Shown here piece after piece: positions 10,603 through 63,355 of a stretch of DNA of 64,000 nt. The position numbers and the translations under genes are program-made. The stretch lies in sequence record MN988561.1, one strand, 5' to 3'. How positions within the stretch are numbered: the first letter of the stretch is position 1; every line of letters starts with the position of its first letter. The notes beneath the pieces were generated by a model that saw nothing but the letters and a program-made list of their open reading frames with translations, was not told the origin of the DNA and ran no database searches.

Positions 10603-10622
10603 NNNNNNNNNNNNNNNNNNNA

Positions 10623-30465: not shown

Positions 30466-30483
30466 CGAGGATAAATCATAGAT

Positions 30484-31197: not shown

Positions 31198-31203
31198 TAC
31201 TTT

Positions 31204-31239
31204 AAGTAGTAGCTTCGTACCAGCGGAGCTACTACTTTT
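31204..31239 (+). terminator. Rho-independent terminator
   Basis: AAGTAGTAGCTTCG-TACCAG-CGGAGCTACTACTT followed by TT. Confidence 0.75.
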
Positions 31240-31267
31240 CATTAATCTGGTAATCCTAGAGGGTTAA

Positions 31268-32305
31268 ATGTTTAAATATTTCGGTGGATCGTTCATTTTC
31301 GCAGCTGCAGCATTGATTGGACTGTATTTCTTCACAGGCAATCCTGCTGCTCTAGTGACAGCAGTTGTCCTCTCAATTGTAGAGGTAGCTGTTAGCTTCG
31401 ACAATGCTATCGTAAATGCATCAATCATGAAGACGATGTCTCCTTTCTGGAAGAAGATGTTCGTTACAGTCGGTATGTTGTTTGCAGTAGGATTCATGAG
31501 ACTATACTTCCCGATTCAGATCGTATCAGCGATTGGAGGTATCTCACTCCACGAAGCTGGTCATCTAGCTCTTGCTGAGCCTGATCGATTCTCTCACATT
31601 CTTATCGAATCTCATCACATCGTAGCTGGATTTGGTGGTGCATTCCTTATGCTCGTAGCATTGAAGTACTTTATCAATGCTGAGAAGGATGTCCACTGGG
31701 TACATGCTATTGAAGCACCTCTAGCATCTCTCGGTAAGCTTGATGAAGTCCAAGTTCTGATCGTAGCAGTTGTATCGTATATCCTTTCTCGCTATCTCGG
31801 AGATCATGGTACAGAGTTCTTCTATGCTGCTTTGATCGGTATCGGTACACATATTGTAGTTGATCTGATCAAAGAAACTCTGAGTCATATCGATACGTTT
31901 CTTGCTAAGGGAGCAGATGTAGCAGTCAAGGGAGGTCTTGGTGCATTCATCTATCTTGAAGTACTTGATGCATCCTTCTCGTTCGATGGAGTCATCGCTG
32001 CATTCGCTATCACCAATCAGATTGCAGTCGTAGCTGCAGGTCTTGGTATCGGTGCTATGTTCGTACGTAGTCTGACACTCATGCTTGACGATAAGGATAC
32101 TCTCACGACTTTCCGATATCTTGAGAGTGGTGCATTCTGGGCTATCGGTGGACTTGCTGCATTCATGTACATCAGCACACTTGTACATGTCTCAGAGTGG
32201 ATTATCGCAGGATTCTCTGCTGTAGTCATTCTCGTATCGTTCCTACATTCGATTAAGGCTAACAAGGATGAAGAACTCCTACAGCCTGTCCTCGAAATTC
32301 ATTAA
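31268..32305 (+). CDS. TerC-like integral membrane protein (DUF475)
   Basis: LSIVEVAVSFDNAIVNA, YLEVLDASFSFDGVIAAFAIT, YLESGAFWAIG. Confidence 0.9.
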   Translation: MFKYFGGSFIFAAAALIGLYFFTGNPAALVTAVVLSIVEVAVSFDNAIVNASIMKTMSPFWKKMFVTVGMLFAVGFMRLYFPIQIVSAIGGISLHEAGHLALAEPDRFSHILIESHHIVAGFGGAFLMLVALKYFINAEKDVHWVHAIEAPLASLGKLDEVQVLIVAVVSYILSRYLGDHGTEFFYAALIGIGTHIVVDLIKETLSHIDTFLAKGADVAVKGGLGAFIYLEVLDASFSFDGVIAAFAITNQIAVVAAGLGIGAMFVRSLTLMLDDKDTLTTFRYLESGAFWAIGGLAAFMYISTLVHVSEWIIAGFSAVVILVSFLHSIKANKDEELLQPVLEIH

Positions 32306-32334
32306 CATTAACTCCTAGATAAGGATTTGGAGAA

Positions 32335-32919
32335 ATGATCGTGCTCGACCTCAATAAAGACGCAGGTATCGTACTGGATCTCAGCAAGGAAGATCCGACC
32401 CTTGAGACTCTCAAGATCAAGCTGGACTGGAATCCTCATCCAGTTCACGGCGCTAGCCTGACAGATGGCTTCGACTTGGATATCTTCGCATATGTTCTCA
32501 ATGAACAAGGCAAGATCACTAGTGGTTCTGATGTTGTATTCTTCAATAATAAGAATTTCGCTAATGGTGCTATTGTTCTTCCTAAGGACAACCGTACTGG
32601 TGAAGGTGACGACGATGAAGAATTGCTCATCACCACGTCTAAGATTCCTGCAGACAAGAAGTCTGTAGCTATCTATGTGACCATTCACAAGGCTACAGAA
32701 CGTGGTCATCACTTCGGTATGGTATCTGGAGCATCTCTCCAGTTCATCAATGCTGACTCTGGTAAGATTATTGCCAAGTATGACCTGACTGCCAACTACT
32801 CTGGTAATACTGCATTCTTTGGTGGTATCCTTTCTGTCGAGAATGGTAAGGGTAAGTTCCAATCGAATGGTGAAGCAGCAGACGCAGATCCTAACCAGAT
32901 CGCTCAGCTGTACGTTTAA
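32335..32919 (+). CDS. terD: TerD-family protein
   Basis: LDWNP, FDLDIFA, VVFFNN, DNRTGEGDDDEE, VTIH, HFGMV. Confidence 0.9.
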   Translation: MIVLDLNKDAGIVLDLSKEDPTLETLKIKLDWNPHPVHGASLTDGFDLDIFAYVLNEQGKITSGSDVVFFNNKNFANGAIVLPKDNRTGEGDDDEELLITTSKIPADKKSVAIYVTIHKATERGHHFGMVSGASLQFINADSGKIIAKYDLTANYSGNTAFFGGILSVENGKGKFQSNGEAADADPNQIAQLYV

Positions 32920-35630: not shown

Positions 35631-36097
35631 TGAAGAAGAATGTATTAGTAGGATTAGATCATAGGATCCTTACAGGTCTAGATAGTCTTGTCCTACTCTT
35701 ATGCACCAGACTACAAATCAAGAAAATCCATCTTCAGAGACTCCTGGTTTGTATTTATTGTGTCTTATTGCATAAAATTGGATTTTCTGTTATAGGCATC
35801 CTTGTTCTACAAGGTTTACAAGAATTGTCCCTGTTAAATATGGGGACGAAATCATACAACAATTACATCGAGGGAACTCGATTTGAGCCATTCAATATTT
35901 ATGTCAGGNNNNNNNNNNNNNNNNNNTCCTTCCTATTCTGTATATATTATACTGCATATTCATTCGCTCTTCATGAGATCACTACAATTAATGTACTTCA
36001 GAAGATTATTCTGGAAGTGTACGTGTATAGTGTATTCTGTCGAGACTACAACGGTACGACGCAAGTAGAGTACTGGGACGAGACGAAGTTCGCCTGA
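35630..36097 (+). CDS. Hypothetical protein spanning an N-gap
   Basis: TAATG coupling; frame continuity across the gap at 35909-35927 cannot be verified. Confidence 0.35.
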   Translation: MKKNVLVGLDHRILTGLDSLVLLLCTRLQIKKIHLQRLLVCIYCVLLHKIGFSVIGILVLQGLQELSLLNMGTKSYNNYIEGTRFEPFNIYVRXXXXXXSFLFCIYYTAYSFALHEITTINVLQKIILEVYVYSVFCRDYNGTTQVEYWDETKFA

Positions 36098-41570: not shown

Positions 41571-41613
41571 GCGTAATTCTTCTAAATAAACGGAAGAATT
41601 ACGCTTTATTTTT
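41571..41613 (+). terminator. Rho-independent terminator
   Basis: GCGTAATTCTTC...GAAGAATTACGC followed by TTTATTTTT. Confidence 0.8.
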
Positions 41614-45977: not shown

Positions 45978-46214
45978 ATGGGCACTAGTGCTCCTGATAT
46001 TACAATTAGTAATCCCAATATTGATCATACTTACGATACGAGTAATCTTCCATTTCTCAGGAAGACTCCTCCTCACGTCCTTGGAGAATCTAAGGACGAT
46101 TTTCTAAGTAGAATGTCCCTTGCTACTCATGACCGAGTGAACAACTTAGAGTTCACGATTGTGAGTCGTAGAGATTGGGACCATCTGCTCTACTTAGCAA
46201 GTAGATCCATCTAA
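45978..46214 (+). CDS. Hypothetical protein
   Basis: GAGGT RBS; 78 aa. Confidence 0.6.
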   Translation: MGTSAPDITISNPNIDHTYDTSNLPFLRKTPPHVLGESKDDFLSRMSLATHDRVNNLEFTIVSRRDWDHLLYLASRSI

Positions 46215-50686: not shown

Positions 50687-51589
50687 ATGCTTAAACGTAA
50701 TGTTTTGTTGACAGGTTCAGCAGGATACATTGGATGCGTAGTCGGAGATCGACTACGCAAGTCCAACAATACTGCATTAACTACCTTAGATCGAAAATAT
50801 CATATTACTGAAGGTGCTCATCACATCCAAGGTGATGTGAAGAATCTTATCAATTCAGAACAAGATGTGCTCGTTCATCTCGCAGCATTGATCTCAGTAC
50901 CTGAGTCTCATAGTCACGCTGAAGAGTACTATGATAATAATTGTTCTCAATTTCATGAAATGCTGAATCTGAATCAAAATCACTTTGGTCATCTGATTTA
51001 TGCATCTTCATTCTCAATTTATGATGAGAATCTAGAGATCTATCCTAAATCCGTTTATGCTTCTACTAAATTAGAAGGTGAATGGATTGTAAAGAGATGG
51101 GCTCAGACGATGAATCAAGATTATTCGATTCTAAGATTTGCAAATCCGATTGGTGTTAGTCAATCACTCCACTCTCATATTGCAGATCGTATACAATCGA
51201 GTTACGCTAATGTTATGTGGAGACTTGCTCGATGCAAATTACTAGGCGAGATGTTTTATATTCATGACCTGCCTGGTATGACACGTGACTTTTATCCTGT
51301 TGAATGGATTGGATATGTTATCGACTGGATTGCTAAGAATGGTCCCGTAGGTACTGTAAATCTAGGTAGCGGTAAGCCTGTATCAGTTATGAATCTTCTT
51401 CAGCATATCTGTGAGAAGTATAATATCAGTTACAAGTATGTTCTACCACCTGAAGGTACTGCTCTAGGTATTACCAAGAAGGTTGATGTATTCAAAGAAG
51501 GGATTCCTGATTTTGATACCTACGATCCAGTTGCATATTGTGAGAAGTCGTTTTTAGATTATCTATCGTTGATTCAGAACGCGAATTAA
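50687..51589 (+). CDS. NAD-dependent nucleotide-sugar epimerase/dehydratase (GalE-like SDR)
   Basis: TGSAGYIG, HLAALISV.ES, YASS, YASTK. Confidence 0.9.
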   Translation: MLKRNVLLTGSAGYIGCVVGDRLRKSNNTALTTLDRKYHITEGAHHIQGDVKNLINSEQDVLVHLAALISVPESHSHAEEYYDNNCSQFHEMLNLNQNHFGHLIYASSFSIYDENLEIYPKSVYASTKLEGEWIVKRWAQTMNQDYSILRFANPIGVSQSLHSHIADRIQSSYANVMWRLARCKLLGEMFYIHDLPGMTRDFYPVEWIGYVIDWIAKNGPVGTVNLGSGKPVSVMNLLQHICEKYNISYKYVLPPEGTALGITKKVDVFKEGIPDFDTYDPVAYCEKSFLDYLSLIQNAN

Positions 51590-51607
51590 CGCTAGATTAG
51601 CCTTCCC
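51581..51607 (+). promoter_or_regulatory. Putative phage promoter, class 1
   Basis: GCGAA-N13-AGCCTTCCC. Confidence 0.75.
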
Positions 51608-51617
51608 TTCTCGTAGA

Positions 51618-51818
51618 ATGAATAAGAGGATCACCATGAAAGATCTACGTGAATTCAAATCTAAGCTTGATGCTAAGTTCGATACTCAGACATCTTGGGG
51701 TAAGAATCAGATCAAGCAAGTCATCAATGATACTTATATTGAAATCATTGAAAGTAAAGTAGAAGGTACTATCCAGCAGTCGACTCCTTCTAATCGTATC
51801 GACGAAGACTCTAAGTAA
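51618..51818 (+). CDS. Hypothetical protein
   Basis: 66 aa ORF; start may be ATG 51636 after GAGGA. Confidence 0.6.
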   Translation: MNKRITMKDLREFKSKLDAKFDTQTSWGKNQIKQVINDTYIEIIESKVEGTIQQSTPSNRIDEDSK

Positions 51819-51840
51819 TTTTCTAGTCAAGGTTAACAAT

Positions 51841-53028
51841 ATGAATTTTCTTTATATCACAAGAAGCATTGATCCGCTAGCTGCTGATCATCGTCCTGAA
51901 GCATATGATCGTTATCGATTCTATGCTCCGATGATGTCACGTCTAGCTGAGATCGGTGGAGGTGACGTCTACCTTCAGACTCGTTATAATCCTAAGGATT
52001 ATCGTCCTGGTGGTACGATTGAAAGAATGGAAAGAAATTTCCGTCTTCCTAAGAAGTACAAGACTGGTGATAAGATTGACATGATCGTATGTGCCATCTT
52101 CTGCCCAGACGATGACATTACATTCAATGAGGATCTGAACAAGTTCCGTCAGACTCTTGAAGATACTGGTGCACCATACATCTATCACGACTCTGATAAA
52201 GAGTTCTCCACTCAGGATGATCAGCAAGATCTTTTCCATCCAGGTAATAAGAACTATTTCCTTCAGACAATATCTAAGCTTCCAGAGGATGACATCCTCC
52301 GATCCCGACTACGCTGCGTGGCTACGTCGGTTCCGGATGCAGATTATCATCAGATTCTGAAGGATAATCTCAAGGTCGATGTAACGTATCTACCTGCTAC
52401 GTTCTGGGGAGACTGGAAAGATAAGTTTGGATACATTCCTCTTTCTGAACGTAAGTACGATCTGACATTCCTTCGTGACTTCTATCTGAATCCGAAGCGT
52501 TCAGTCATTCTGAAGAATCTTGGTACTGGTGTATCGGATATCAGTGTTCTTCTTGGATCTCGTAGTGGCGACCCTTCTAGTCGTGGAGGATACATCAGCC
52601 ATAAGGTTCCGACGATTGATTTCGATCAGATGCGTCAAGGTGCTACGTACAATGATCTATCGAAGTACATGTCTAAGTCTCGTCTGACTCCGTCTACGAG
52701 TATTTATATGCGTGTCACTTCTAAGCTATTCGAAGCAGCTGAGAGTCGTACTCTAGCACTACTCTTCTCTCCGTGCTTCTATTCAGACGTAGTTGATCAC
52801 CCTTCTGAGGCAGATGCTTATCTGAGTCAACTTGCTCTTGTAATTCCAGGATCCACTACTGTAAGTCAGTTGATTACACGTATTCGTAGTCTGACTGATG
52901 AAGAATATCTGAAGCTTGTCGAGGTTCAGGATAAGCTCGTTGAGACTGTATTCAGTATCAAATCTGATTACATCACTAGCAAGCTGACTAAGATCATCAC
53001 AGATTATGTAGGTAATGTGAATGGCTAA
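51841..53028 (+). CDS. Putative GT-B glycosyltransferase (beta-glucosyltransferase-like C-terminal lobe)
   Basis: YDLTF...KR, VTSKLFEAAESRTLAL, QLITRIRSL..EYLKLVEVQ echo the GT-B nucleotide-binding lobe. Comparison by eye only. Confidence 0.5.
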   Translation: MNFLYITRSIDPLAADHRPEAYDRYRFYAPMMSRLAEIGGGDVYLQTRYNPKDYRPGGTIERMERNFRLPKKYKTGDKIDMIVCAIFCPDDDITFNEDLNKFRQTLEDTGAPYIYHDSDKEFSTQDDQQDLFHPGNKNYFLQTISKLPEDDILRSRLRCVATSVPDADYHQILKDNLKVDVTYLPATFWGDWKDKFGYIPLSERKYDLTFLRDFYLNPKRSVILKNLGTGVSDISVLLGSRSGDPSSRGGYISHKVPTIDFDQMRQGATYNDLSKYMSKSRLTPSTSIYMRVTSKLFEAAESRTLALLFSPCFYSDVVDHPSEADAYLSQLALVIPGSTTVSQLITRIRSLTDEEYLKLVEVQDKLVETVFSIKSDYITSKLTKIITDYVGNVNG

Positions 53029-53899
53029 TGTTCTAGTTACTCTCATTACCAATCGTCCAGATGTTTCTTCGGAACGATGGATCGGTACCATCGGAAAGCT
53101 ATCTAAGCTTTCCGAGTACCATGATATGACCTACTCGATTCTTCTGCAACCTCCTTTTACAGTAGAAGACTGTGATAAAGTTCGTACTAGAGTACTTGAA
53201 GCACTCGGTCCTAAGAATCAGGTAGTCGTAGAGCATTTTATTAATCCTCCAGGTCCATTCAATTTTAGAACTGCTCGAAATCAGGCTATGTTGAATGTAC
53301 CGTATCTGAATACTTTTGATTACGTTCTTATCACTGACGATGACTTCAAGTTCAGTGGTCCTACTCCTAAGGGATATGACTCATGGGAACGTTATCATCA
53401 GGCTATTAAGTATCTCGATGAGAACCGTCGATGCGGTGGTGTATTAATCAAAGGTATGTTTGGATCTCCTCCAGTCGATAAGGGTGGAAATGAGGTATCA
53501 AAAGTACATGACGAGTACTACTCGACCAATCGAGGCATTCTTCATCGTAATGTGATGAAGTACGATAACGTAGATTGGATCTACTCAAATGAATGCTTCG
53601 ATTATCCTTCTGCTCTCGAGGATGCAGCAGCTTGTTTCTCTCGAATTGAGCTCGGCTACTATTATGCTCGTATCTGGAAGTCACCCACCACACCTCTTCC
53701 TGTGAAGCAGACATGTGCTGATGACATCCCTGATGACAATATCTATTCGCGACATATGGTCAATGAAGTAGGTATTGGTAAAGCTATTCGTGAACGTTAC
53801 GACGATCCTACATGGGAAGTCGATCAGAAGCGTATGCCTAAGAAACTCAATAATCTTAAACTCGAAGCCATGAACAGTCGTGGATGGGTTGTAACCTAA
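53021..53899 (+). CDS. Putative GT-A (GT2-like) glycosyltransferase
   Basis: FNFRTARNQ, YVLITDDD (DxD), EDAAAC. Confidence 0.6.
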   Translation: MANVLVTLITNRPDVSSERWIGTIGKLSKLSEYHDMTYSILLQPPFTVEDCDKVRTRVLEALGPKNQVVVEHFINPPGPFNFRTARNQAMLNVPYLNTFDYVLITDDDFKFSGPTPKGYDSWERYHQAIKYLDENRRCGGVLIKGMFGSPPVDKGGNEVSKVHDEYYSTNRGILHRNVMKYDNVDWIYSNECFDYPSALEDAAACFSRIELGYYYARIWKSPTTPLPVKQTCADDIPDDNIYSRHMVNEVGIGKAIRERYDDPTWEVDQKRMPKKLNNLKLEAMNSRGWVVT

Positions 53900-53910
53900 G
53901 GAGTCTCGAC

Positions 53911-54150
53911 ATGAAACATCTTCTTGAGAAAGCAACGACTCTCGTCAAGCAGTCTAATAAATTGACTCTGGAATACCGTAAGTCTCCAGATGAATTGAAA
54001 TCTAAGACTCAAGAGATCGTCAAGCACTTTCTCGAATTCAACGAGATCGAATCGAAAGAAGATTTCATTGATCAATTGTCGTCCAAATCTGAGGAGACAG
54101 GTAATATGGATTACCTGTCTGCAGCTGAGATTATCCGAGAGTACTCTTAA
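53911..54150 (+). CDS. Small helical hypothetical protein
   Basis: AAGGAG RBS before ATG 53911. Confidence 0.65.
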   Translation: MKHLLEKATTLVKQSNKLTLEYRKSPDELKSKTQEIVKHFLEFNEIESKEDFIDQLSSKSEETGNMDYLSAAEIIREYS

Positions 54151-54455
54151 TGTTTAAAATTACTGTAGAGTCGTCTCAACCTGTTAAGAGTATCAACATT
54201 GAGTTCGGTGAAACTCAGGAGACGAAGGCTGAATTCTATCCTGTACCGACCTTTGAGACTAGAGGTGTAGAGAGTCTTAAATACGAGACTCCTCCTTCAT
54301 CTGAGTCATATGAAGACGTTCTAGCAAGACGAGCATCGACTGTATCGACTACTCCTGTAAAGCCTAAAGAGACTGAGACTGCTCCAGAAGTAGTCGAGGA
54401 TCTTACTAATCGACCTGCACTTGTTGATCAATCCTTTGCAGGATCTACTTTCTAA
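54150..54455 (+). CDS. Hypothetical protein; candidate ParM adaptor
   Basis: Short beta-rich N-terminus, disordered acidic Pro/Thr linker, aromatic C-terminal tip (FAGSTF); lies directly upstream of parM. Confidence 0.6.
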   Translation: MFKITVESSQPVKSINIEFGETQETKAEFYPVPTFETRGVESLKYETPPSSESYEDVLARRASTVSTTPVKPKETETAPEVVEDLTNRPALVDQSFAGSTF

Positions 54456-54463
54456 GAGGTAAT

Positions 54464-55429
54464 ATGAAAACTGTATTAGGTCTTGATCCTGGGTACGGAG
54501 ACTTCAAGGTATGCTTCGGTAATTCTAAAGGGATTATCTCTAAGCTATACAAGTTCAACTCCGTACTAGGTCGTGTTGATGTCAGTCAACATATCAACGA
54601 TACTCGAGTTTATGGATATAAAGGTACGACCTACTATGTAGGTGAGATGGCCTTGAAACTTGAGTCATCTCGAATCATCGACTTGATGTCTTACAACAAT
54701 CTGGAGACATTCTCTCCTCTTCTGATTGAACATGTCATCAATGAACTCGGAGAAGTTCCTGATATCGTCGTATGTGGTCTTTCGATTGCTCACGTTGATT
54801 ATTCAGGGTACTATCGAGATGCGATTCTTAACTATCTTGTTAAGGAGAAGAATCTTCCAATCAAAGATGTCCGCATCATCCCACAGGGTGTAGGTGGTAA
54901 GTTAACGTATGACAAGTATGGTCGTACATTCCCTGCCCTCACATCAGAATTCAGTGATGACAACAACTATGTAGGTTGTGATATTGGATTCAATACACTC
55001 GATGTATTCCATGTCATTCAGAACAAGGTATCTCCTAACTTGATTAGAGGTATTGAAAGTCAAGGTGTAGTCAAGATTGTGACTCGTCTTCTTGACTACA
55101 TCAAGAATGACTACAGTCTGGAATTCTCTGTCAAGGAAGGTAAGAACATCCTTGATAATGGTCAATTTAAGATCCGTGGACGTGAATTTGATGTCACCAA
55201 ACAGATTGAAGTGATCAAACGCTCTTATCTTGAAGAAGTCAAGGAACTCATCGAGAATGAGTTCGGAGCAGTACTTGACAAGGTCGAGAAGATCAAGATG
55301 TTTGGAGGAGGTTCATATCTCTTCAATACGATGAATGACTCCTTCATCGAAACTCCAGAATCTCGTGCTGAATACTATAATTCCATCGGGAATTATCTAC
55401 ATGGCTTGACGATTGTCGAGAAAGATTAA
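54464..55429 (+). CDS. parM: ParM/StbA-family actin-like ATPase
   Basis: Actin-fold motifs: GLDPGYGDFK (phosphate 1), IIPQG (connect 1), CDIGFNTLD (phosphate 2), FGGGS (adenosine). Confidence 0.9.
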   Translation: MKTVLGLDPGYGDFKVCFGNSKGIISKLYKFNSVLGRVDVSQHINDTRVYGYKGTTYYVGEMALKLESSRIIDLMSYNNLETFSPLLIEHVINELGEVPDIVVCGLSIAHVDYSGYYRDAILNYLVKEKNLPIKDVRIIPQGVGGKLTYDKYGRTFPALTSEFSDDNNYVGCDIGFNTLDVFHVIQNKVSPNLIRGIESQGVVKIVTRLLDYIKNDYSLEFSVKEGKNILDNGQFKIRGREFDVTKQIEVIKRSYLEEVKELIENEFGAVLDKVEKIKMFGGGSYLFNTMNDSFIETPESRAEYYNSIGNYLHGLTIVEKD

Positions 55430-55433
55430 TCTT

Positions 55434-55473
55434 AAGGTCTACTAGAAGAGATTCTAGTAGACCTTTTCTTTTT
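55434..55473 (+). terminator. Rho-independent terminator
   Basis: Perfect 14-bp stem AAGGTCTACTAGAA-GAGA-TTCTAGTAGACCTT followed by TTCTTTTT. Confidence 0.9.
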
Positions 55474-55482
55474 GAGGATAAA

Positions 55483-55851: not shown

Positions 55852-56580
55852 ATGGCTCGTTGCTATGTAGGATGTAGTGGATTCTCGTATAATCATTGGA
55901 ATGATAACTTCTACCCTGCAGGAGTAGAGAGGTTCTCATTTTATACGAGTCAATTTGATTCATTAGAGATCAATAGTTCATTCTACAGATTACCTAGTGC
56001 AAGCGTATTCCACTCATGGTATCGACGATCACCTGCTCATATGACATTCACTGTGAAAGCTCCTCAGACGATTACTCATCGTAAGAAGCTAAAGGATGCT
56101 GACGATATAGTTCAGAGATTCTATGAGAATACTCTTGAGCTAGGTGACAAGATGAAATGTGTCTTATGGCAGTTACCTCCTAATTTCTCCATAAGAATGT
56201 ATGATCGTGTCAAGAAATTCTGTGACAGTATTCATAACAGATTTCCTAATTCAGCATTCGAGTTCAGACATCCTTCATGGATGCAGACTCACGTACCTCA
56301 ACTTCTATCTACATACGACTTTGAGTTTGTACGTACAGATTTTCATAAATACGTAAATGTATCCATGGATGGGTCCTCGTCTAAATTCCAGTACTACCGA
56401 TTACATGGACCTACAGGTCAGTATCACGGTCGTTACACTGATGAGTTTCTTGAGAATATAGCTGATCGTCTAACAGATGAATCATTCGTATTCTTCGACA
56501 ATGATGGTGGAGGTCAAGCTCCTAAGGATGCTAAAAGATTAATCAAAATTCTAGAGACAAGAAATGAAATTAAATTATAG
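55852..56580 (+). CDS. DUF72 (YecE) family protein
   Basis: YVGCSGFSYNHW, LEINSSFYRLP, FTVKAP..ITH, LWQLPP, AFEFRH.SW, YYRLHG, FFDND. Confidence 0.92.
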   Translation: MARCYVGCSGFSYNHWNDNFYPAGVERFSFYTSQFDSLEINSSFYRLPSASVFHSWYRRSPAHMTFTVKAPQTITHRKKLKDADDIVQRFYENTLELGDKMKCVLWQLPPNFSIRMYDRVKKFCDSIHNRFPNSAFEFRHPSWMQTHVPQLLSTYDFEFVRTDFHKYVNVSMDGSSSKFQYYRLHGPTGQYHGRYTDEFLENIADRLTDESFVFFDNDGGGQAPKDAKRLIKILETRNEIKL

Positions 56581-57109
56581 AGCATATGCAGGAATTGGAT
56601 CAAGAAGTACTCCTCCACATATTCTTGAGTTTATGAGAATTCTAGCATTCAAGCTTGGGTCTCAAGAAGATCCATGGACTGGTCGGTCAGGTCACGCTGA
56701 TGGTGCAGATGATGCATTCGAAGTAGGTATGGAACAAGCTAATGGACCTATGGAGATCTTTCTACCGTGGAGAGGTATGGCTAACAGTCGATGTAAGAGT
56801 GATTCTCCGTATTACGAAATCAAAACAATTGCTTACGATCTAGCTTCTAGGATTCACCCTAAATGGTACGGATTAACTCATGGAGCTAAGAAACTTCATG
56901 CTAGGAATACTTATCAAGTCTTAGGTTACGATCATCAGACTTGGAGTAAAGCTGTTGTATGCTATACTTCTGACGGTCTACCGATTGGAGGTACTCGTAC
57001 AGCGATTAAGATAGCAGAGATGCACGGTATTCCGGTTATCAATCTAGGTGATCCTGAGTGTAAATACGAAACTCCTGATCAAATTGTGGAATATTTAAAC
57101 TCTCTATAG
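56564..57109 (+). CDS. SLOG/DprA-like Rossmann-fold protein
   Basis: YAGIGSR.TP, RSGHADGAD, HARN..QVLG, GGTRTA. Confidence 0.8.
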   Translation: MKLNYRAYAGIGSRSTPPHILEFMRILAFKLGSQEDPWTGRSGHADGADDAFEVGMEQANGPMEIFLPWRGMANSRCKSDSPYYEIKTIAYDLASRIHPKWYGLTHGAKKLHARNTYQVLGYDHQTWSKAVVCYTSDGLPIGGTRTAIKIAEMHGIPVINLGDPECKYETPDQIVEYLNSL

Positions 57110-57110
57110 A

Positions 57111-57137
57111 GCGAATCTAGCGTGGGAAAGCCTTCCT
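57111..57137 (+). promoter_or_regulatory. Putative phage promoter, class 1
   Basis: GCGAA-N13-AGCCTTCCT. Confidence 0.8.
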
Positions 57138-57160
57138 TCTTATTGTGGAATAATATGGAA

Positions 57161-57169
57161 TGCTATAAT
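57161..57169 (+). promoter_or_regulatory. Possible sigma70 extended -10 element
   Basis: TGCTATAAT in an intergenic position; no clear -35. Confidence 0.3.
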
Positions 57170-57233
57170 TGTTTGAAGAGTTAAAATTNNNNNNNNNNNN
57201 NNNNNNNNNNNNNNNNNNNNNNNNNNNNNNNCA

Positions 57234-57872
57234 TACGGTGAGTGGCATCATATTCTTCCTTACGCTATATTTCCTGCGTATCAGTCTGATAAAAGATTTA
57301 TTGTTAAGATACCTGCAAGAGCTCACTTGATAGCACATCGAATGTTAGTAAAAGCACTGCCAGGTAATCATAAAGCAGTACTTGCTGTTTACTATATGAC
57401 TCTTATCAAGAAGCCTGGTATGTATTTGAGATCTAAAGAATTTGAAAGATTAAGAAAGATAAGATCTGAAATTCAATCTCAACGTAGTAAAGAAATGAAT
57501 ACTGGTCGGACGAGATCAGAAGAGACTAAACAGAAAATGTCTCAATCGAGATTGGATCTATTAGAAACTAGACCTGATCTTAAAGAGATGCAGTCGATCA
57601 GAAATCTTGGGAATAAGTACAATCTAGGCAAGAAAAATTCTGATGAGACTAAGGCTAAACGTACAGCTAGTTGGAAGAGAACAGTTGCAGATAATCCAAA
57701 GAATATGGAAAGTCTCTTAGAAAGAAATAAGGGAAATAAATATGCTGAAGGATGTAAGTGGATGCATCATCCTGAGAAGCAATTGACTACGCTCGTTCCA
57801 TCTAAAGACGTACAAATGAGACTATCACATGGATGGTTTTACGGAAGAAAGAAATTCAAGAAGGCTTCTTAG
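57234..57872 (+). CDS. HNH homing endonuclease with NUMOD3-type repeats; 5' end in gap
   Basis: In-frame extension upstream of 57327 gives YGEWHHILP...IPARAHLIAH. Also RTRSEETKQKMS, KKNSDETKAK, C-terminal GWFYGR. Confidence 0.8.
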   Translation, partial: YGEWHHILPYAIFPAYQSDKRFIVKIPARAHLIAHRMLVKALPGNHKAVLAVYYMTLIKKPGMYLRSKEFERLRKIRSEIQSQRSKEMNTGRTRSEETKQKMSQSRLDLLETRPDLKEMQSIRNLGNKYNLGKKNSDETKAKRTASWKRTVADNPKNMESLLERNKGNKYAEGCKWMHHPEKQLTTLVPSKDVQMRLSHGWFYGRKKFKKAS

Positions 57873-58775
57873 ATGTTTGACATTAGAATTGACAATCCTG
57901 AACTTCATAAGATTCTTGAGTCTTATAAAGGCAAAAAGATTGATTTTTATCACAATGACGGCAACGCTGGGGACAGTGTGATTGCAGTTGGTACTTATCA
58001 GACTTTTGATAAGTACGATATCGAGTACTCTGCTTACAATAAGCCTCGTGCTCATAAGCAAACAAGTGATACTCTCTTTATAGCCGGTGGAGGTAATCTT
58101 GTAAATTATTACCCTAATGGTGAACGAGCTATCAAAGAGGGTATGAAGAAGTACGATAAAATTATTGTCCTTCCTCACTCTATCCGAGGTAAAGAAGAAC
58201 TTCTCAAGAAGATGGATAAAAGGTTCACAGTCTTTACTCGTGAAGTTCCATCTCATGAATACGTTAAGTCGATGGTCAGATCGGACGTAACTGTTCATCT
58301 TGAACATGATATGGCTTTCTTCATGGATGTAAAAGCTATCTTTGAAGATCCTACGATCAATGAGAAAGCTAATAAATTCTACATTAATAAACTTCGATCA
58401 ATCGGTCGAGGTCCTGAAGATGTTATTGGCAAGGATAATTACTGTTTCCGTGAAGACGTCGAAGCAGTTGTAGAGGTTAAGTCTTCTCAGAATGTCGATA
58501 TCTCTCATCTGTTCGAAAGAGGATTGGATCGTACGAACTCTTTCATCGCTGCTAATGCATTTCTAAAGTACATTGATGCTTCAAAGTCAATTACTACAAG
58601 TCGTCTTCATACAGGCATTGGTGCAGCTATGTGCGGTACTCCTGCTACGGTATTTGATAATTCATATGGCAAGATTTCTAGTATCTACGAATTCTCAATG
58701 AAGGATCGTGGATACAACTTCCGTGTAGGTCTCATTGATGAAATGAGATCAATTATCGAACGAATTGAGGACTGA
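57873..58775 (+). CDS. Polysaccharide pyruvyltransferase family protein
   Basis: GNAGDSVI, GGGNL, LPHSI, FTRE..S, HDMAF, TSRLH..I, DNSYGKI. Confidence 0.88.
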   Translation: MFDIRIDNPELHKILESYKGKKIDFYHNDGNAGDSVIAVGTYQTFDKYDIEYSAYNKPRAHKQTSDTLFIAGGGNLVNYYPNGERAIKEGMKKYDKIIVLPHSIRGKEELLKKMDKRFTVFTREVPSHEYVKSMVRSDVTVHLEHDMAFFMDVKAIFEDPTINEKANKFYINKLRSIGRGPEDVIGKDNYCFREDVEAVVEVKSSQNVDISHLFERGLDRTNSFIAANAFLKYIDASKSITTSRLHTGIGAAMCGTPATVFDNSYGKISSIYEFSMKDRGYNFRVGLIDEMRSIIERIED

Positions 58776-59830: not shown

Positions 59831-62800
59831 ATGTCAATTAATTCCAGAGACTACGCTCCGTTATTATCTTATGCTAAGATGCTAACGTCAAGACTGTCTA
59901 CTATTCCAGACGTCACGATGGTTGGTAACTTTGCTAAGACTCCTCCTAATCTTAATGTCTTTCAAATTAAGCCTACTCTGATCCGATTCGGTACTGATCT
60001 TCTCATTCAAGGTGACAAGTCAGATATCGTACTCGGATCTAATTATCTTGCTGCTCATCCTAAGGATGAATACGAAATCCTCGAATATGAGGATCCTAGT
60101 ATCGCTGCACGTCGATTCGAGAGTACATGGGGTATGACTCTTGAAGAGTATGATGACCATGTTAAAGTTCTGAATACGCAAGTAGCTACTGTCAATAACG
60201 AAAGTTATGTCCTAGATGAGGAGACGAAAGCTAAGATGTCAGATGCATCAGACTTTCTCACACGATGGATTAGAATGTTCAGTTCTAAGACCAACAAAGC
60301 ACCACTGCTAGTTGGTCATTCAGGTATCTCGAAATCTGCATTCGTTAAGGAAGTTATATCTCGTCTAGATGCTCAGTCGACTGAATGGGGATATCGCCTC
60401 GTTGACATTCGTGCTGCTTATCTTGATAAGACTGACCTTATGGGTTACATCTCTGTCGAGAGTTTCAAGGGTAATGATGTATGGACTGACTCTCCTAAGA
60501 TTGAATTCTTGACATCTACGTCTGAGTTCATCAAGGAGTGCCGTAAATTCGTTACGACTACTCCTCGTGATGATGACAACGGTGAGATGTGGGATATCGT
60601 CAAGGAGTATTCCAAGACACCTGTCCTCTTCTTCGATGAAATCAATCGTGCACCTGCTTATATTCAAGCTCAGGTTATGATCATCATCAACCAGCATCGT
60701 CTGAACGACTACTCGCTGGATCTCGCTCCTAAGATCGCTGCTGCTAACGTACCGATTGATATGGAAGATCTTGATGATACGCAGAAAGAACTGATCAAGT
60801 ACGTTCTGCAGGATGAGATCACCGATAAGGCGATCATTGACAGATTCATTCCTATAGAAATCAAAGGTAAGGATAAATCTGTTATTGATGCTACGTATTC
60901 GTATCTCACCAGGAGATATGCTACGAGTGGTGCCAGTATGGACCTTCTTGAGTCTGTCTACAAGAAGGGTAAACCTCTTCATGACATCACGACAATCGAC
61001 AAGTATGGTAAGTTCAGATCGCACCGTGGTCTAGAATTTGTATGTACGTACCTATCAGGTTGTGAAGGTGCTAAAGAGAAGCCTATGCTATCAGTGATCA
61101 AGTCACTGATTGGTGAGAATGCTACGGACGATTATGTAAGTTATCTTGCTGAGAAGTTCAAGACGACTAAAGAAAATCTCTCTAAGAAGATCTTTGATCT
61201 GAATGAGTCAACTTCCAAGTTTACAGCTCATTGCATCAAGTTCAATATCCCTACGATGCTATTAGGTCGTATGGGTATTGGTAAAACTGCTAAGATCAAT
61301 GCTGCTACGAAAGAGTTGGACGCTGATGTTATCAATATCGATCTATCCTCGAGAGATCGTACCGATATCAGTGGATTCCCGAGTCAGTATTCCTTCGCTC
61401 AGTATATCTTCAGCAAGGGTGGCCAGAATGATGATCTAACAACATCCTCAGCATTCAGACAGTTTGAAGCTCAGCTAGTTAACAATCCTAATGTTCCTAA
61501 GAAGACGACTGGATTCGTAGGTAGTGGTACTCTCACACGTCGTCTGGATGAAGCTAGAGCATCAGGTAAGAAGTTAGTCATTGTATTCGACGAAATCAAT
61601 CGTGCATCTCCTATCGTTCAGTCTGCTGTCTTTGAAGCAATCTCTGATAAGCGATTCATGGGCGTATCTCTAGAAGGTATCGATTACTCTGTTGTATCTG
61701 CTGGTAACTGGGAAGACCCTAACGAGTCTTCAGGTAACTATCAGGTTACACCTCTTGATACTGCTACTCTTCACCGATTTGCATCTCGAGTCATCGATAA
61801 GATGACAGAAGACGATATCGGAGAAATGAGAGACTTCATCAAGACAACGTATCCGAATACTTACTCTGCTCTCAATATGGGTCAGATGAGTAACAACGAT
61901 ATCGTTCAACTCTTGAATACTTCTTCAGATGAAGATGATAACGCTGAGCCAGGTACTGAATGGGCTAGACCCTCATTCTCGATGCGTACATTCCAGTCTC
62001 TGAACGAGATCCTGGATATGTATAAGTTCGTCTGGACTCAAGAGATGACGGTGGATGAATCGGACGATATCGTCAAGGTACTCGAATCACCTAACTACAT
62101 TCTCCGTGATCGTGCAGGTGAAGAAGTTACTCTGAGAACATCAGGTATAAAGAAGTACTTCCCGAGTCTAGTAGTTGAAGACTTTATCGCTAAAGCTGCT
62201 CAGATGCTAGGTGACGATAATGTTTCAGTCCTCGATAAAAGTATGATTCTTGCAGAACTTCAGTACAATGAAGTCACTGCATATCAGTCACTTGAGAAGG
62301 CTGTCCGAGGAGTCATTCCTGGATCAATGCTTAAGCATATGGGATCAGGTCTTCGTGTATACTATACAGATCTGAGTAAGGCTTCAGTAGGTGCTGTTGA
62401 CCTTGATCAACTAGTTATGGAACTCTCGGATAATGAAATCCGTAAGGTTCTGAACAAGATGATCTCAAGATCTGAGGCTTCGAAGACTAATGACGTTATC
62501 AAGAGTGCTATCATTGCTCTTGGTCAGGCTAATGAGATCTCTGTCGATTATATCAACAAGATTCTCAGTCTGTACAAGTCAGTAGTTCCAACATCTACGA
62601 TCAGTCTTGTTGATATCTTGAATCAGATTCCAGACGAGAATATCGTCAGTGGAGGATCTGAGATTGTATTCAACTTCATAGATCTTGCTGCATTCCCTGA
62701 ACGTGATGTCATCTTGCAGTCAGGTTCTGTCTCAGTAGGTACACCAGTTTCGACTAATCCTACTGATTATAAGTTCCTGAGCTACTTGAAGGTTCCACTT

Positions 62801-63355
62801 GAATTTGGATCTGTTAATCTTGGATCTAAATATGAGAAGGATCAGAGACTTTACATTCGAAATATCATTCCTAACTGCTTCAGAATCATCTGTAATGCTG
62901 ATGCACTACAAGCGTACTATCGTTATGAGTTTACGATTTCTGATGCATTCTGGAAGATCGACACTATCAAACCTTCGACTAAACGATTTGAATACAATAT
63001 CGAATACGTAGCGAAGATCAAAGGTGTCAGCTTCAGAATGAAGATTGATAATATTCGTCATCCTGTAGCTCACAAGGACGGTGATCTGACTAAGCCTCTG
63101 ACTAAGGATACAATTATCCAACGTGATACGACAGTCTTGTCGGGTATGCTGGCTACACAAGCAGTGGTATCTGATTCTTCTGTTAGTAACTTGACTAAGA
63201 ATCTATCAGACGTTCTGACGGATGACGATATCACAGTCATCAAGAGTACAGTGATGAAGAAGAAGGCAGATACTGCCAAGATGTCACTCACTAATGACTA
63301 TATGCAACTCATCCTTGTCGGATGGCGTAAAGTCGAGCCTAAGTTCTCATTCTAA
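59831..63355 (+). CDS. Tandem MoxR-type AAA+ ATPase (1174 aa)
   Basis: AAA1: GHSGISKS, LFFDEINRA, AAN, IDRF. AAA2: GRMGIGKT, IVFDEINRA, AGN, LHRF. Confidence 0.88.
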   Translation: MSINSRDYAPLLSYAKMLTSRLSTIPDVTMVGNFAKTPPNLNVFQIKPTLIRFGTDLLIQGDKSDIVLGSNYLAAHPKDEYEILEYEDPSIAARRFESTWGMTLEEYDDHVKVLNTQVATVNNESYVLDEETKAKMSDASDFLTRWIRMFSSKTNKAPLLVGHSGISKSAFVKEVISRLDAQSTEWGYRLVDIRAAYLDKTDLMGYISVESFKGNDVWTDSPKIEFLTSTSEFIKECRKFVTTTPRDDDNGEMWDIVKEYSKTPVLFFDEINRAPAYIQAQVMIIINQHRLNDYSLDLAPKIAAANVPIDMEDLDDTQKELIKYVLQDEITDKAIIDRFIPIEIKGKDKSVIDATYSYLTRRYATSGASMDLLESVYKKGKPLHDITTIDKYGKFRSHRGLEFVCTYLSGCEGAKEKPMLSVIKSLIGENATDDYVSYLAEKFKTTKENLSKKIFDLNESTSKFTAHCIKFNIPTMLLGRMGIGKTAKINAATKELDADVINIDLSSRDRTDISGFPSQYSFAQYIFSKGGQNDDLTTSSAFRQFEAQLVNNPNVPKKTTGFVGSGTLTRRLDEARASGKKLVIVFDEINRASPIVQSAVFEAISDKRFMGVSLEGIDYSVVSAGNWEDPNESSGNYQVTPLDTATLHRFASRVIDKMTEDDIGEMRDFIKTTYPNTYSALNMGQMSNNDIVQLLNTSSDEDDNAEPGTEWARPSFSMRTFQSLNEILDMYKFVWTQEMTVDESDDIVKVLESPNYILRDRAGEEVTLRTSGIKKYFPSLVVEDFIAKAAQMLGDDNVSVLDKSMILAELQYNEVTAYQSLEKAVRGVIPGSMLKHMGSGLRVYYTDLSKASVGAVDLDQLVMELSDNEIRKVLNKMISRSEASKTNDVIKSAIIALGQANEISVDYINKILSLYKSVVPTSTISLVDILNQIPDENIVSGGSEIVFNFIDLAAFPERDVILQSGSVSVGTPVSTNPTDYKFLSYLKVPLEFGSVNLGSKYEKDQRLYIRNIIPNCFRIICNADALQAYYRYEFTISDAFWKIDTIKPSTKRFEYNIEYVAKIKGVSFRMKIDNIRHPVAHKDGDLTKPLTKDTIIQRDTTVLSGMLATQAVVSDSSVSNLTKNLSDVLTDDDITVIKSTVMKKKADTAKMSLTNDYMQLILVGWRKVEPKFSF

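What the first reader, a model, noticed from the sequence alone, without database searches (positions are those of the whole stretch)
53911..55473. Phage-encoded ParM-type actin with a candidate adaptor: an actin alternative to the PhuZ spindle
Seen: a 321-aa ORF with all four actin-fold motifs (DPGYGDFK, PQG, DIGFNT, GGG). It is preceded by two small, translationally linked ORFs and followed by a perfect 14-bp terminator. The 101-aa ORF has a short folded N-terminus, a disordered acidic linker and an aromatic C-terminal tip. Established: plasmid ParM works with ParR, whose C-terminal peptide binds the filament; jumbo phages such as phiKZ position DNA with tubulin PhuZ; phage actins are rarely characterised (AlpC of prophage CGP3 is one example). 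Inference: this phage may position or transport its replicating DNA or capsids with an actin filament. No parC-like iteron array is visible here.
Basis: partly seen in the sequence, partly recalled or inferred. Interest (0 to 1): 0.72.

Follow-up and report, generated by a model that had tools for sequence, protein, structure and literature searches.

The report
Phage actin gene with partner proteins
A large virulent Rhizobium phage carries a three-gene unit, an actin-like ATPase preceded by two small partner genes, and the actin plus its disordered partner recur together in hundreds of large phages, pointing to an unstudied phage cytoskeleton whose cargo is unknown.

Summary
The window is Rhizobium phage RHph_TM61 (about 203 kb, Kleczkowskaviridae). 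Window 54464-55429 encodes a ParM/Alp-type actin-fold ATPase. It passes two Pfam thresholds, has invariant nucleotide-binding motifs, and its confident model is closest to Ta0583, ParM proteins and CorM. GenBank already calls it 'MreB-like ATPase' or 'partition protein'.

The new result concerns the small ORFs. The 101-aa ORF belongs to an unannotated family of at least 244 clusters. Members have a conserved ~22-residue N-terminus, a variable acidic disordered linker and a conserved tip ending in a hydrophobic residue. The family lies just upstream of this actin clade in 41 of 49 loci, and three reverse look-ups found the actin downstream. Most phages also carry a paralogue. The window's subclade has the 79-aa helical ORF there instead, conserved in four closer relatives.

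This is not a ParMRC system. No ribbon-helix-helix adaptor or iterons were found, the gene order is reversed, and no close homologue occurs in plasmids or isolate genomes. No tubulin or chimallin was found.

Best reading: a filament-forming actin with a dedicated disordered tether or regulator, expressed alongside replication genes. Polymerisation, binding and cargo are untested. I classify it as a new variant of a known kind, interest about 0.6.

The parts
53911..54150 (+). 79-aa acidic, predicted helical protein ('w79 family'). It is the first gene of the module in the window's subclade.
   Evidence: ORF and GenBank CDS. AAGGAG lies at 53898-53903. Homologues occupy the same position, upstream of a type-A gene and the actin gene, in four metagenomic contigs: L078 E 1.5e-14, L075 7e-12, L074 3e-4, L073 2e-3. 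It is absent from the other actin clades and from the rest of the phage genome. There is no Pfam, PHROG or Atlas lead.
54150..54455 (+). 101-aa 'type A' partner. It has a conserved ~22-residue N-terminus with a beta-hairpin-like alternating pattern, an acidic disordered linker with a short helix motif at residues 54-61, and a conserved C-terminal tip (R-x3-V-x3-F ... F-end).
   Evidence: HMM built from other clades hits it at E 6e-22. Alignment A3. A profile search found 244 clusters at E<=1e-3, all listed members 77-151 aa. AlphaFold gives pLDDT 83-85 for residues 1-20 and 54-70 elsewhere. It lies upstream of the actin gene in 41 of 49 loci. The reverse test succeeded 3 of 3 times. It is paralogous to type B (hhalign 95.5%, E 1.4e-8). 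No significant Pfam or PDB match; PHROGs gave only one weak stray hit among 29 members.
54464..55429 (+). 321-aa ParM/Alp-type actin-like ATPase (ALP).
   Evidence: Pfam ALP_N 41.3 bits (cut-off 26.3) and MreB-like_C 45.7 bits (cut-off 27.8). PHROG 691 'partition protein' E 8e-31. Model pLDDT 89.5, pTM 0.88. Foldseek top hits: Ta0583 E 7e-18 (TM 0.76), pSK41 ParM, pCBH ParM, CorM, R1 ParM, Alp12 and Alp7A; MreB and DnaK score lower. Nucleotide-binding motifs are invariant.
55434..55475 (+). Intrinsic terminator (14-bp perfect stem, GAGA loop, T-run) that closes the transcription unit after the actin gene.
   Evidence: centroid -20.9 kcal/mol, z -4.3. It is lineage-specific: a terminator-like hairpin was found after the actin gene in only 9 of 37 loci, and most of those are weak.

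Best explanation
Window 53911-55475 is a three-gene cytoskeletal module of a virulent ~203-kb Rhizobium myovirus.

The 321-aa protein is a ParM/Alp-type actin-fold ATPase. It most likely polymerises with ATP into filaments during infection (inferred).

The 101-aa protein is its dedicated, co-inherited partner. It is an intrinsically disordered acidic tether made of short conserved motifs. I propose two roles (both inferred):
- The conserved C-terminal tip (R-x3-V/I-x3-hydrophobic ... hydrophobic end) docks as a short amphipathic helix on the actin. This would parallel how the C-terminal helices of ParR and CorR, and a short helix inside a disordered region of MinC, bind a pocket on ParM or CorM.
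- The ~22-residue N-terminal motif, with its strand-like alternating pattern, self-associates or binds a second target.

That second target is not a sequence-specific centromere. There is no DNA-binding fold, the protein is acidic, and there are no repeats. The partner therefore couples, nucleates or bundles filaments rather than acting as a ParR on parC.

The 79-aa helical protein is a subclade-specific third component. It sits where most other phages carry a paralogous second tether (type B).

The module lies at the end of a co-directional block that begins with DNA gyrase. In relatives it sits among replication and nucleotide-metabolism genes. The most likely role is therefore organising replicating phage DNA or the replication zone in phages that lack a PhuZ/chimallin system (inferred, weakest step).
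For: Actin identity and likely activity:
- Pfam and PHROG hits above thresholds.
- Invariant phosphate-1, catalytic PQG, phosphate-2 and adenosine motifs in 31 homologues.
- Confident model, closest to the ParM/Alp/Ta0583/CorM group and scoring above MreB and Hsp70.

Dedicated partner:
- The type-A family lies upstream on the same strand in 41 of 49 loci that have enough flank. The order is always B, A, ALP, and in 30 loci the gap is under 150 nt.
- An independent profile search of 1.84 billion proteins found 244 clusters, all listed members 77-151 aa.
- Three members chosen without regard to the actin gene all have an ALP gene directly downstream.
- Five closer relatives keep a small ORF, type A, ALP layout; in four the small ORF is a w79 homologue.
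- The one-adaptor versus two-adaptor state follows the ALP tree.

Tether architecture:
- The N-terminal pattern occurs in 146 of 150 members and the C-tip pattern in 131 of 150.
- The last residue is always hydrophobic. Linker length is variable and rich in K, E, S, D and P. 96% of members have pI below 6.
- AlphaFold confidence is high only for residues 1-20.
- Types A and B are paralogues that share the second strand and the tip.

Not a plasmid or prophage system:
- The best plasmid hit is 24-28% identical.
- Among 185,579 species genomes, only 5 MAG contigs reach 38% identity or more, and none is from an isolate.

Precedents:
- In AlpAC of prophage CGP3 the adaptor gene also lies upstream of the actin gene (PMC4446434).
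- CorMR is a ParMR system with no parC-like repeats whose adaptor binds membrane rather than DNA. A short helix within a disordered region of MinC binds the same CorM pocket as CorR (10.1101/2025.06.27.661541).

Genomic context: gyrase, PhoH, ligase, exonuclease, clamp and SSB genes are neighbours.
Against: - There is no experimental evidence of polymerisation, of a physical interaction, or of any phenotype.
- Conserved adjacency proves a functional link, not binding.
- It is unknown which end of the 101-aa protein contacts the actin, if either.
- No complex prediction could be run.
- The closest fold match, Ta0583, has no established cellular function.
- Some ALP lineages lack the small partners: the Campylobacter CP220 group, L047, L054 and L019. 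The actin can therefore work without them or with other partners.
- The neighbouring genes in this phage and its closest relatives include sugar and DNA-modification enzymes. An enzymatic role for an ASKHA ATPase is therefore not excluded.
- The cargo assignment rests on gene neighbourhood alone.
Confidence: 0.55

Rival explanations
1. The small partner is a regulator of actin assembly rather than a cargo tether. It could be a nucleator, capper, bundler or monomer-sequestering factor. Its several short motifs would each bind an actin protomer, in the manner of WH2-type or thymosin-like proteins, or of MinC on CorM. No cargo would be attached.
For: - Type A carries more than two conserved motifs: the N-terminus, a middle LDTDxDF-like motif (a short helix at residues 54-61 in the window's protein), an EVVEKPxIE-like motif and the tip.
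- No cargo-binding domain is recognisable.
- In CorMR, a short helix within a disordered region of MinC competes for the adaptor pocket and antagonises polymerisation.
Against: - The strongest conservation lies at the two extreme ends, separated by a linker of very variable length (77-151 aa overall). That is the classic architecture of a tether.
- Two paralogues with different N-termini but related tips suggest two attachment specificities.
Confidence: 0.25
2. This is a classical type II (ParMRC or AlpACS-like) partition system. It would segregate or position an episomal form of the phage genome, for example in pseudolysogeny or a carrier state. One of the small proteins would bind a centromere that lies elsewhere or is too degenerate to detect.
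For: - The actin is ParM-type, and public annotation calls it a 'partition protein'.
- The gene order, adaptor then actin, matches alpA-alpC.
- The alpS repeats of CGP3 are short and degenerate (TTAAnnG), so such sites could escape a repeat search.
Against: - Neither small protein has a ribbon-helix-helix, helix-turn-helix or other DNA-binding signature, and both are acidic (pI 4.55 and 5.16).
- No iterons occur in 51-58 kb or in five related loci, and no tandem array is nearby.
- In the k-mer scan the locus does stand out for one hexamer: GTCAAG occurs 7 times in 400 nt within the 3' half of the actin gene (tied top of the window). But the hexamer is enriched across the whole window, mostly on the coding strand, so a codon-pair bias is the likelier cause.
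- The family has no close homologue in 72,556 plasmids or in isolate genomes.
- The phages carrying it are large virulent myoviruses, and no integrase is annotated.
Confidence: 0.08
3. The 321-aa protein is a non-filamentous ASKHA-fold ATPase, such as a chaperone-like or kinase-like enzyme. It would act with the neighbouring sugar or DNA-modification genes, and the small proteins would be its substrates or co-factors.
For: - The module sits next to a nucleotide-sugar epimerase, two unannotated proteins and a pyruvyl transferase in this phage.
- In the closest relatives it sits next to glycosyltransferases or 5-hydroxymethyluracil DNA-modification genes (HMUD2, HMUDK_hel).
- Distant homologues in YerA41 are annotated as DnaK-like.
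- RP13, YerA41 and Carin-5, which carry ALP homologues, have hypermodified DNA (PMC13697223).
Against: - The top 29 structural matches are filament-forming ParM/Alp, MamK, AlfA and BeeR proteins or Ta0583, at E 1e-17 to 1e-11. No sugar kinase appears in the top 50.
- Pfam assigns the protein to actin-like families above threshold.
- The neighbouring genes are not conserved with the module; only the small partners are.
Confidence: 0.1

Closest known systems
AlpC/AlpA/alpS of Corynebacterium glutamicum prophage CGP3
   Same: It is a phage-encoded actin-like protein with a co-transcribed adaptor gene placed upstream of the actin gene. It is an early gene and is needed for efficient phage DNA replication rather than for classical segregation (PMC4446434).
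   Different: AlpA binds repeated alpS sites upstream of the operon; here no repeats and no DNA-binding features were found. CGP3 is a temperate prophage of an actinobacterium, whereas this is a virulent ~203-kb myovirus family. Sequence relatedness to AlpC and AlpA was not tested.
ParMRC type II plasmid partition (R1, pSK41, pCBH)
   Same: It shares the actin fold, the five nucleotide-binding motifs and close structural similarity. The partner has a flexible region and a conserved C-terminal tip. In ParR that tip is the ParM-binding helix (PDB 4A62 title).
   Different: There is no ribbon-helix-helix adaptor and no parC. The gene order is reversed, and the module is not on a plasmid. Identity to the solved ParM-like structures is 14-20% in the structural alignments, and the best plasmid homologues are only 24-28% identical.
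CorMR of Anabaena (repurposed chromosomal ParMR)
   Same: CorM is the nearest solved protein by sequence profile (E 1.2e-4) and among the top fold matches. It is an actin-like system with no parC-like repeats whose adaptor binds something other than DNA. Short helices in disordered regions bind a conserved pocket on CorM.
   Different: CorR keeps a ribbon-helix-helix core and uses an N-terminal amphipathic helix to bind membrane. The phage partner has neither. CorMR controls the shape of a cyanobacterium and has no role in a virus.
Ta0583 of Thermoplasma acidophilum
   Same: It is the best structural match (E 7e-18, TM 0.76) and the source of the Pfam MreB-like_C family that the protein hits.
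   Different: It is an archaeal chromosomal gene of unknown cellular role. Identity is 19%, and no comparable small partner is known to me (from memory).
PhuZ tubulin spindle of nucleus-forming jumbo phages
   Same: It is a phage-encoded cytomotive filament used during lytic infection of a large phage.
   Different: PhuZ has a different fold (tubulin GTPase) and works with a chimallin nucleus. Neither was found in this genome. No functional equivalence has been shown.

Membership tests
ParM/Alp-type actin-fold (ASKHA) ATPase | Phosphate-1, catalytic/connect, phosphate-2 and adenosine motifs | tested here: met
   D8-x-G10 ... K15, P140-Q141-G142, D173-x-G175-x-N-T178 and G281-G283 are present and invariant in 31 homologues.
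ParM/Alp-type actin-fold (ASKHA) ATPase | Matches curated actin-like family models above threshold | tested here: met
   ALP_N 41.3 bits against a 26.3 cut-off. MreB-like_C 45.7 bits against 27.8. Alp7A_like_C 22.2 bits against 22. PHROG 691 E 8e-31.
ParM/Alp-type actin-fold (ASKHA) ATPase | Four-subdomain actin fold, closer to ParM-like proteins than to MreB, Hsp70 or sugar kinases | tested here: met
   Model pLDDT 89.5. Ta0583, ParM proteins, CorM, Alp12 and Alp7A score E 1e-18 to 1e-13. MreB and DnaK score about 1e-11.
ParM/Alp-type actin-fold (ASKHA) ATPase | Nucleotide-dependent polymerisation into filaments | not testable with these tools
   Requires biochemistry or imaging.
Type II ParMRC partition system | ParR: ribbon-helix-helix centromere-binding adaptor | tested here: not met
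   Neither small protein has a significant Pfam, PHROG or PDB match. The model of the 101-aa protein shows no helix-helix core. Both proteins are acidic.
Type II ParMRC partition system | parC: array of direct repeats next to the operon | tested here: not met
   No family of three or more phased repeats was found in 51-58 kb or in five related loci. No tandem array is nearby. The only k-mer excess at the locus, GTCAAG x7 in the actin gene's 3' half, fits a window-wide codon-pair bias.
Type II ParMRC partition system | Gene order parM then parR, on a low-copy replicon | tested here: not met
   The partner genes lie upstream of the actin gene. The replicon is a virulent phage genome. There is no close homologue in plasmids or isolate genomes.
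Type II ParMRC partition system | Adaptor C-terminal helix that binds the actin's hydrophobic pocket | tested here: inconclusive
   A conserved C-terminal tip with i/i+4 hydrophobic spacing exists. No complex prediction or binding assay was possible.
AlpACS (prophage CGP3) | Adaptor gene upstream of, and co-transcribed with, the actin gene | tested here: met
   The order is 79-aa, 101-aa, actin, with overlapping or 8-nt junctions and a single terminator after the actin gene. Compare.
AlpACS (prophage CGP3) | Adaptor binds clustered short repeats (alpS) upstream of the operon | tested here: inconclusive
   No clustered repeats were detected. The upstream sequence is coding. Very degenerate sites cannot be excluded, and DNA binding is not testable here.
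AlpACS (prophage CGP3) | Sequence homology to AlpC and AlpA | not tested
   No AlpC or AlpA sequence was available through the tools.
PhuZ/chimallin system of nucleus-forming phages | Tubulin-fold GTPase and a chimallin shell protein in the genome | tested here: not met
   The filament candidate has an actin fold. No tubulin, PhuZ or chimallin appears in the annotation of all 375 features. Pfam on 10 large hypothetical proteins gave none. Limitation: many hypothetical proteins were not scanned.

The most novel reading that the evidence does not exclude
Many large virulent phages that lack a tubulin/chimallin nucleus organise their infection with an actin-based cytoskeleton of their own. These include phages of Rhizobium, Ralstonia, Vibrio and Acinetobacter, and many uncultivated marine and soil phages. 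Filaments would be coupled to the replication zone or another cargo without a centromere. The coupling would be made by a new class of intrinsically disordered tethers (type A and type B, with the 79-aa family as a substitute) built only from short linear motifs. This would be a minimal adaptor solution unrelated to ParR.
Probability: 0.35. Interest if true: 0.8.

Novelty: new variant of a known kind. Interest (0 to 1): 0.6.

Why it matters
Cytomotive filaments in phages are known in detail only for tubulins (PhuZ, TubZ) and for one prophage actin (AlpC). This work shows an actin-like ATPase conserved across large virulent phages of several bacterial classes, together with a previously unannotated, co-inherited family of disordered partner proteins.

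If the module forms filaments, subcellular organisation by a virus-encoded cytoskeleton would extend well beyond the nucleus-forming jumbo phages. It would also supply a minimal, centromere-free adaptor design for actin-like filaments.

The system is directly testable. The proteins are small and soluble-looking, and cultivable phage-host pairs exist for Rhizobium etli and Vibrio. The partner family (alignments A3 and A4) can also serve as a marker to find these modules in viromes.

Tried and rejected
- **Word-based and BLAST searches with the 101-aa protein** found only the same phage genus. A tblastn with a type-B protein found only Vibrio phages, and weakly. Profiles were needed.
- **Database searches for the small proteins** gave nothing useful: Pfam, PHROGs, PDB sequence profiles and the ESM Atlas.
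- **Other neighbours as part of the module.** The downstream 119-aa ORF, the 292-aa and 395-aa upstream ORFs and DUF72 are not syntenic with the actin gene anywhere else. I rejected them as parts.
- **Is the terminator a family feature?** No. A terminator-like hairpin was found in 9 of 37 loci, most of them weak.
- **Centromere search.** Repeat finder, tandem repeats and a local k-mer scan found one hexamer cluster: GTCAAG occurs 7 times in the 3' half of the actin gene. The hexamer is enriched window-wide on the coding strand (75 observed, 39 expected), consistent with a Val-Lys codon pair. I do not take it as a centromere.
- **Sliding-clamp idea.** From memory of the RB69 polymerase C-terminal peptide, I considered that the C-terminal tip could be a sliding-clamp-binding tail. 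In Vibrio phage pv27 only the two partner proteins carry such a tail among 39 neighbouring gene products, and the polymerase was not in the fetched stretch. The idea is neither supported nor excluded.
- **Literature searches** found no study of this actin clade or of its partners.
Full report
**Identity of the window.** The region is 100% identical to Rhizobium phage RHph_TM61 (MN988561, about 203 kb, Kleczkowskaviridae, genus Cuauhnahuacvirus, host R. etli). It is 98.5-98.6% identical to its sister phages TM30, TM40 and Y65. Window coordinate = record coordinate minus 62000. RefSeq calls the last one a 'partition protein'.

**The observation.** The ORFs are 53911-54150 (79 aa), 54150-54455 (101 aa) and 54464-55429 (321 aa).
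- The 79-aa stop overlaps the 101-aa start (TAATG). The 101-aa stop is followed 8 nt later by the actin start, behind a GAGG.
- A perfect 14-bp hairpin with a T-run lies at 55434-55465. Its centroid energy is -20.9 kcal/mol, z = -4.3, and none of 200 shuffles folds as well.
- The next strong co-directional terminators upstream lie at 46076-46098 and 41571-41604. The module therefore closes a block of about 9 kb that starts with the DNA gyrase genes. That these genes are co-transcribed is an inference.

**The 321-aa protein is a ParM/Alp-type actin.**
- It passes the Pfam gathering thresholds of ALP_N and MreB-like_C, and matches PHROG 691 end to end at E 8e-31.
- With an alignment of 31 homologues, AlphaFold gives pLDDT 89.5 and pTM 0.88.
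- Foldseek against the PDB ranks Ta0583 first (E 7e-18, TM 0.76). Next come pSK41 ParM, pCBH ParM, CorM, R1 ParM (including the entry with the ParR peptide), Alp12, Bacillus thuringiensis ParM and Alp7A. MreB and DnaK follow at about 1e-11. The Swiss-Prot models give the same order.
- By sequence the family is remote from everything solved. The protein alone finds nothing. The family profile finds CorM at 1.2e-4 and Ta0583 at 0.04.
- The phosphate-1, PQG, phosphate-2 and GGG residues are invariant across homologues that share only 38-46% identity. This argues for a working ATPase.
- Polymerisation is inferred from family membership and has not been shown.

**Distribution.**
- Homologues of 38-46% identity occur in Vibrio phages (Va1, pv27, phiTY18, phiKT1024 and others), the Campylobacter CP220/CP21/CPt10 group, Ralstonia phage RP13 and Acinetobacter phage Ab1-TPeters. 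Weaker matches occur in YerA41 and Carin-5.
- They also occur in 59 IMG/VR loci, on contigs of up to 205 kb.
- Metagenomes hold closer relatives at 52-59% identity.
- The best of 72,556 plasmids is only 24-28% identical.
- In one genome for each of 185,579 species, only five MAG contigs reach 38% or more, and none is from an isolate.
- The family is therefore confined to large, apparently virulent phages. This argues against a plasmid or prophage partition role.

**The small ORFs: the main new result.** BLAST-level searches with the 101-aa protein find nothing outside the genus. Reading the ORFs upstream of the actin gene in the related loci revealed a recurring pattern:
- The proteins are about 80-110 aa long.
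- They have a conserved N-terminus of about 22 residues. Hydrophobic and polar residues alternate in two stretches, like a beta-hairpin.
- The linker is of variable length and low complexity.
- The last 14 residues are conserved.

Two families exist. Type A lies next to the actin gene, and the window's 101-aa protein belongs to it (E 6e-22 against an HMM built from other clades). Type B lies upstream of A. The two are paralogues (hhalign probability 95.5%, E 1.4e-8).

Evidence that the pairing is real:
- Of 49 loci with at least 700 nt of upstream sequence, 41 carry type A and 31 carry type B. The order is always B, A, actin, and in 30 loci the gap is under 150 nt.
- A profile of type A scored against 1.84 billion representative proteins found 244 clusters at E<=1e-3 and 168 at E<=1e-10. 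All 150 listed members are 77-151 aa and match end to end.
- As a test free of the ascertainment bias of the first set, I looked up three of these proteins. Two have a gene with the two actin-like Pfam families directly downstream. The third has a truncated gene that is 42% identical to the window's actin over 299 residues.
- Among 150 representatives, the N-terminal pattern is present in 146 and the tip pattern in 131. The last residue is always hydrophobic (I 81, F 41, L 21). 96% have pI below 6, and the linker is rich in K, E, S, D, P and T.
- No Pfam family covers type A. PHROGs shows only a stray match for either family, and the type-A profile matches no solved structure.

**The window's subclade.**
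- In the actin tree the window groups with RP13, two IMG/VR contigs and the Acinetobacter phage (support 97/98). Members of this clade carry one adaptor rather than two.
- All five contigs fetched for the four closer metagenomic actins carry a type-A protein of 92-99 aa directly upstream of the actin gene.
- Four of the five also carry a 73-79-aa protein upstream of type A that is homologous to the window's 79-aa ORF. The phmmer E-values are 1.5e-14, 7e-12, 3e-4 and 2e-3.
- The fifth contig (L076) has only an unrelated 35-aa ORF in that position.
The 79-aa family is restricted to this subclade and sits where other phages have type B.
- Within the subclade, type A keeps three elements: the N-terminal motif, a middle 'D-V/I-L-A-x-R-A-S' motif and a tip 'N-R-P-x-x-V-D-x-S-F ... 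F'. The middle motif coincides with the only helix AlphaFold predicts, at residues 54-61.
- The AlphaFold model of the 101-aa protein has pLDDT 83-85 for residues 1-20 and 54-70 elsewhere. This fits a disordered protein whose N-terminus folds only with a partner.
- None of the other neighbours (119-aa, 292-aa, 395-aa, DUF72) is syntenic with the actin gene elsewhere.
- A further family of about 220 aa accompanies the module in 24 loci of the main clade, but it is absent from this genome.

**What it is not.**
- No iterons or tandem arrays flank the module here or in five relatives.
- The only local k-mer excess is a hexamer (GTCAAG) that is enriched throughout the window on the coding strand.
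- Neither small protein has a DNA-binding signature, and both are acidic.
- The partners precede the actin gene, as in alpA-alpC of prophage CGP3, whose authors contrast that order with ParM-ParR (PMC4446434).
- The annotation of all 375 features shows no tubulin, PhuZ or chimallin. Ten large hypothetical proteins gave no such Pfam hit.

**Mechanism.**
- Shown: an actin-fold ATPase with intact catalytic motifs, and a co-inherited family of disordered partner proteins with two conserved ends.
- Inferred from established knowledge of ParM/ParR: the tip docks as a short amphipathic helix on the actin. The CorMR system is a recent precedent. CorR's C-terminal helix and a short helix within a disordered region of MinC both bind a conserved pocket of CorM, and the adaptor has lost DNA binding (10.1101/2025.06.27.661541).
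- Inferred: the N-terminal strands pair with each other or with a second target.
- The result would be a centromere-independent tether, or alternatively a nucleator or bundler.
- The cargo is unknown. Replicating DNA or the replisome is the best guess, based on the genes that surround the module in different phages: gyrase or topoisomerase II, PhoH, ligase, exonuclease, clamp, SSB and primase.
- Rivals are a pure assembly regulator, a cryptic partition system, and a non-filamentous enzyme linked to the neighbouring sugar and DNA-modification genes. These are listed with their tests.

**Novelty.** The actin gene is already annotated, and phage actins are a known kind (AlpC). I found no paper on this clade or on its partners in the searchable library. 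New here are the partner families, their strict linkage to this actin clade, and the evidence that the system differs from ParMRC in every defining feature except the actin itself. I therefore classify it as a new variant of a known kind.

**Limits.**
- Everything is computational.
- The phylogeny has long branches for the window's clade.
- The loci from IMG/VR were collected through the actin gene. The co-occurrence count in that direction therefore says how often the actin has the partner, not the reverse. The reverse direction rests on three look-ups.

Noticed in passing
window 50687-53899 and 55852-58775: The module is flanked by a nucleotide-sugar epimerase, two unannotated proteins (395 aa and 292 aa), DUF72, a DprA-like protein and a polysaccharide pyruvyl transferase. 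In the closest metagenomic relatives the same module sits next to glycosyltransferases (L073, L078) or 5-hydroxymethyluracil DNA-modification genes (HMUD2, HMUDK_hel; L076). RP13, YerA41 and Carin-5, which carry ALP homologues, have hypermodified DNA (PMC13697223). This phage may also have sugar-hypermodified DNA.
   Followed up: partly
window 59831-63355: A 1174-aa protein with AAA_5 (dynein/MoxR-like) and further AAA domains. Von Willebrand factor A proteins are annotated elsewhere in the window. A MoxR/vWA-type pair in a phage is unusual. The heptamer CGATATC occurs 6 times within 400 nt inside this gene (around 61701-62200).
   Followed up: no
window 29350-32919: A tellurite-resistance-like cluster: a 'toxic anion resistance' protein, a vWA protein, a DUF475 membrane protein and a TerD-like protein, as annotated in GenBank.
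   Followed up: no
window 10603-10621, 35909-35926, 57189-57231: Three runs of N (19, 18 and 43 bases). The last lies just upstream of a homing-endonuclease-like ORF (NUMOD3 motif, 57327-57872). The GenBank record is labelled 'partial genome'.
   Followed up: no
window 55059-55410 (and whole window): The hexamer GTCAAG occurs 7 times within 350 nt in the 3' half of the actin gene. It occurs 75 times in the window against 39 expected, mostly on the coding strand. This is probably a Val-Lys codon-pair bias rather than a binding site.
   Followed up: partly
L009:1478-2137, L020:1181-1840, L121:3172-3828 and 21 more loci: A conserved ~220-aa protein family with no Pfam match lies upstream of type B, type A and ALP in 24 loci of the main (Vibrio/marine) clade. 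It is absent from the Rhizobium phage genome and may be a fourth component of the module in those phages.
   Followed up: partly
L121 (Vibrio phage pv27) 636-11171 and 23693-24043: At least eight small neighbouring proteins end in a shared C-terminal motif resembling H-P-E-Y/I/L-x-I. They form a multi-copy paralogous family of unknown function clustered around the actin module. Similar endings were seen in L017 and L057.
   Followed up: no
L071:29864-33193 and L071:35269-38652 (RHph_TM61 record 149863-158651, outside the window): The genome encodes a 1109-aa family-A DNA polymerase and a 1127-aa protein annotated as RNA polymerase beta-prime subunit. It also carries a long tRNA array. The large PolA recalls the SP15-like PolA group of phages with T-modified DNA.
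   Followed up: no
window 3809-6073: A 754-aa hypothetical protein with no Pfam match. It is the largest unannotated ORF in the window.
   Followed up: partly
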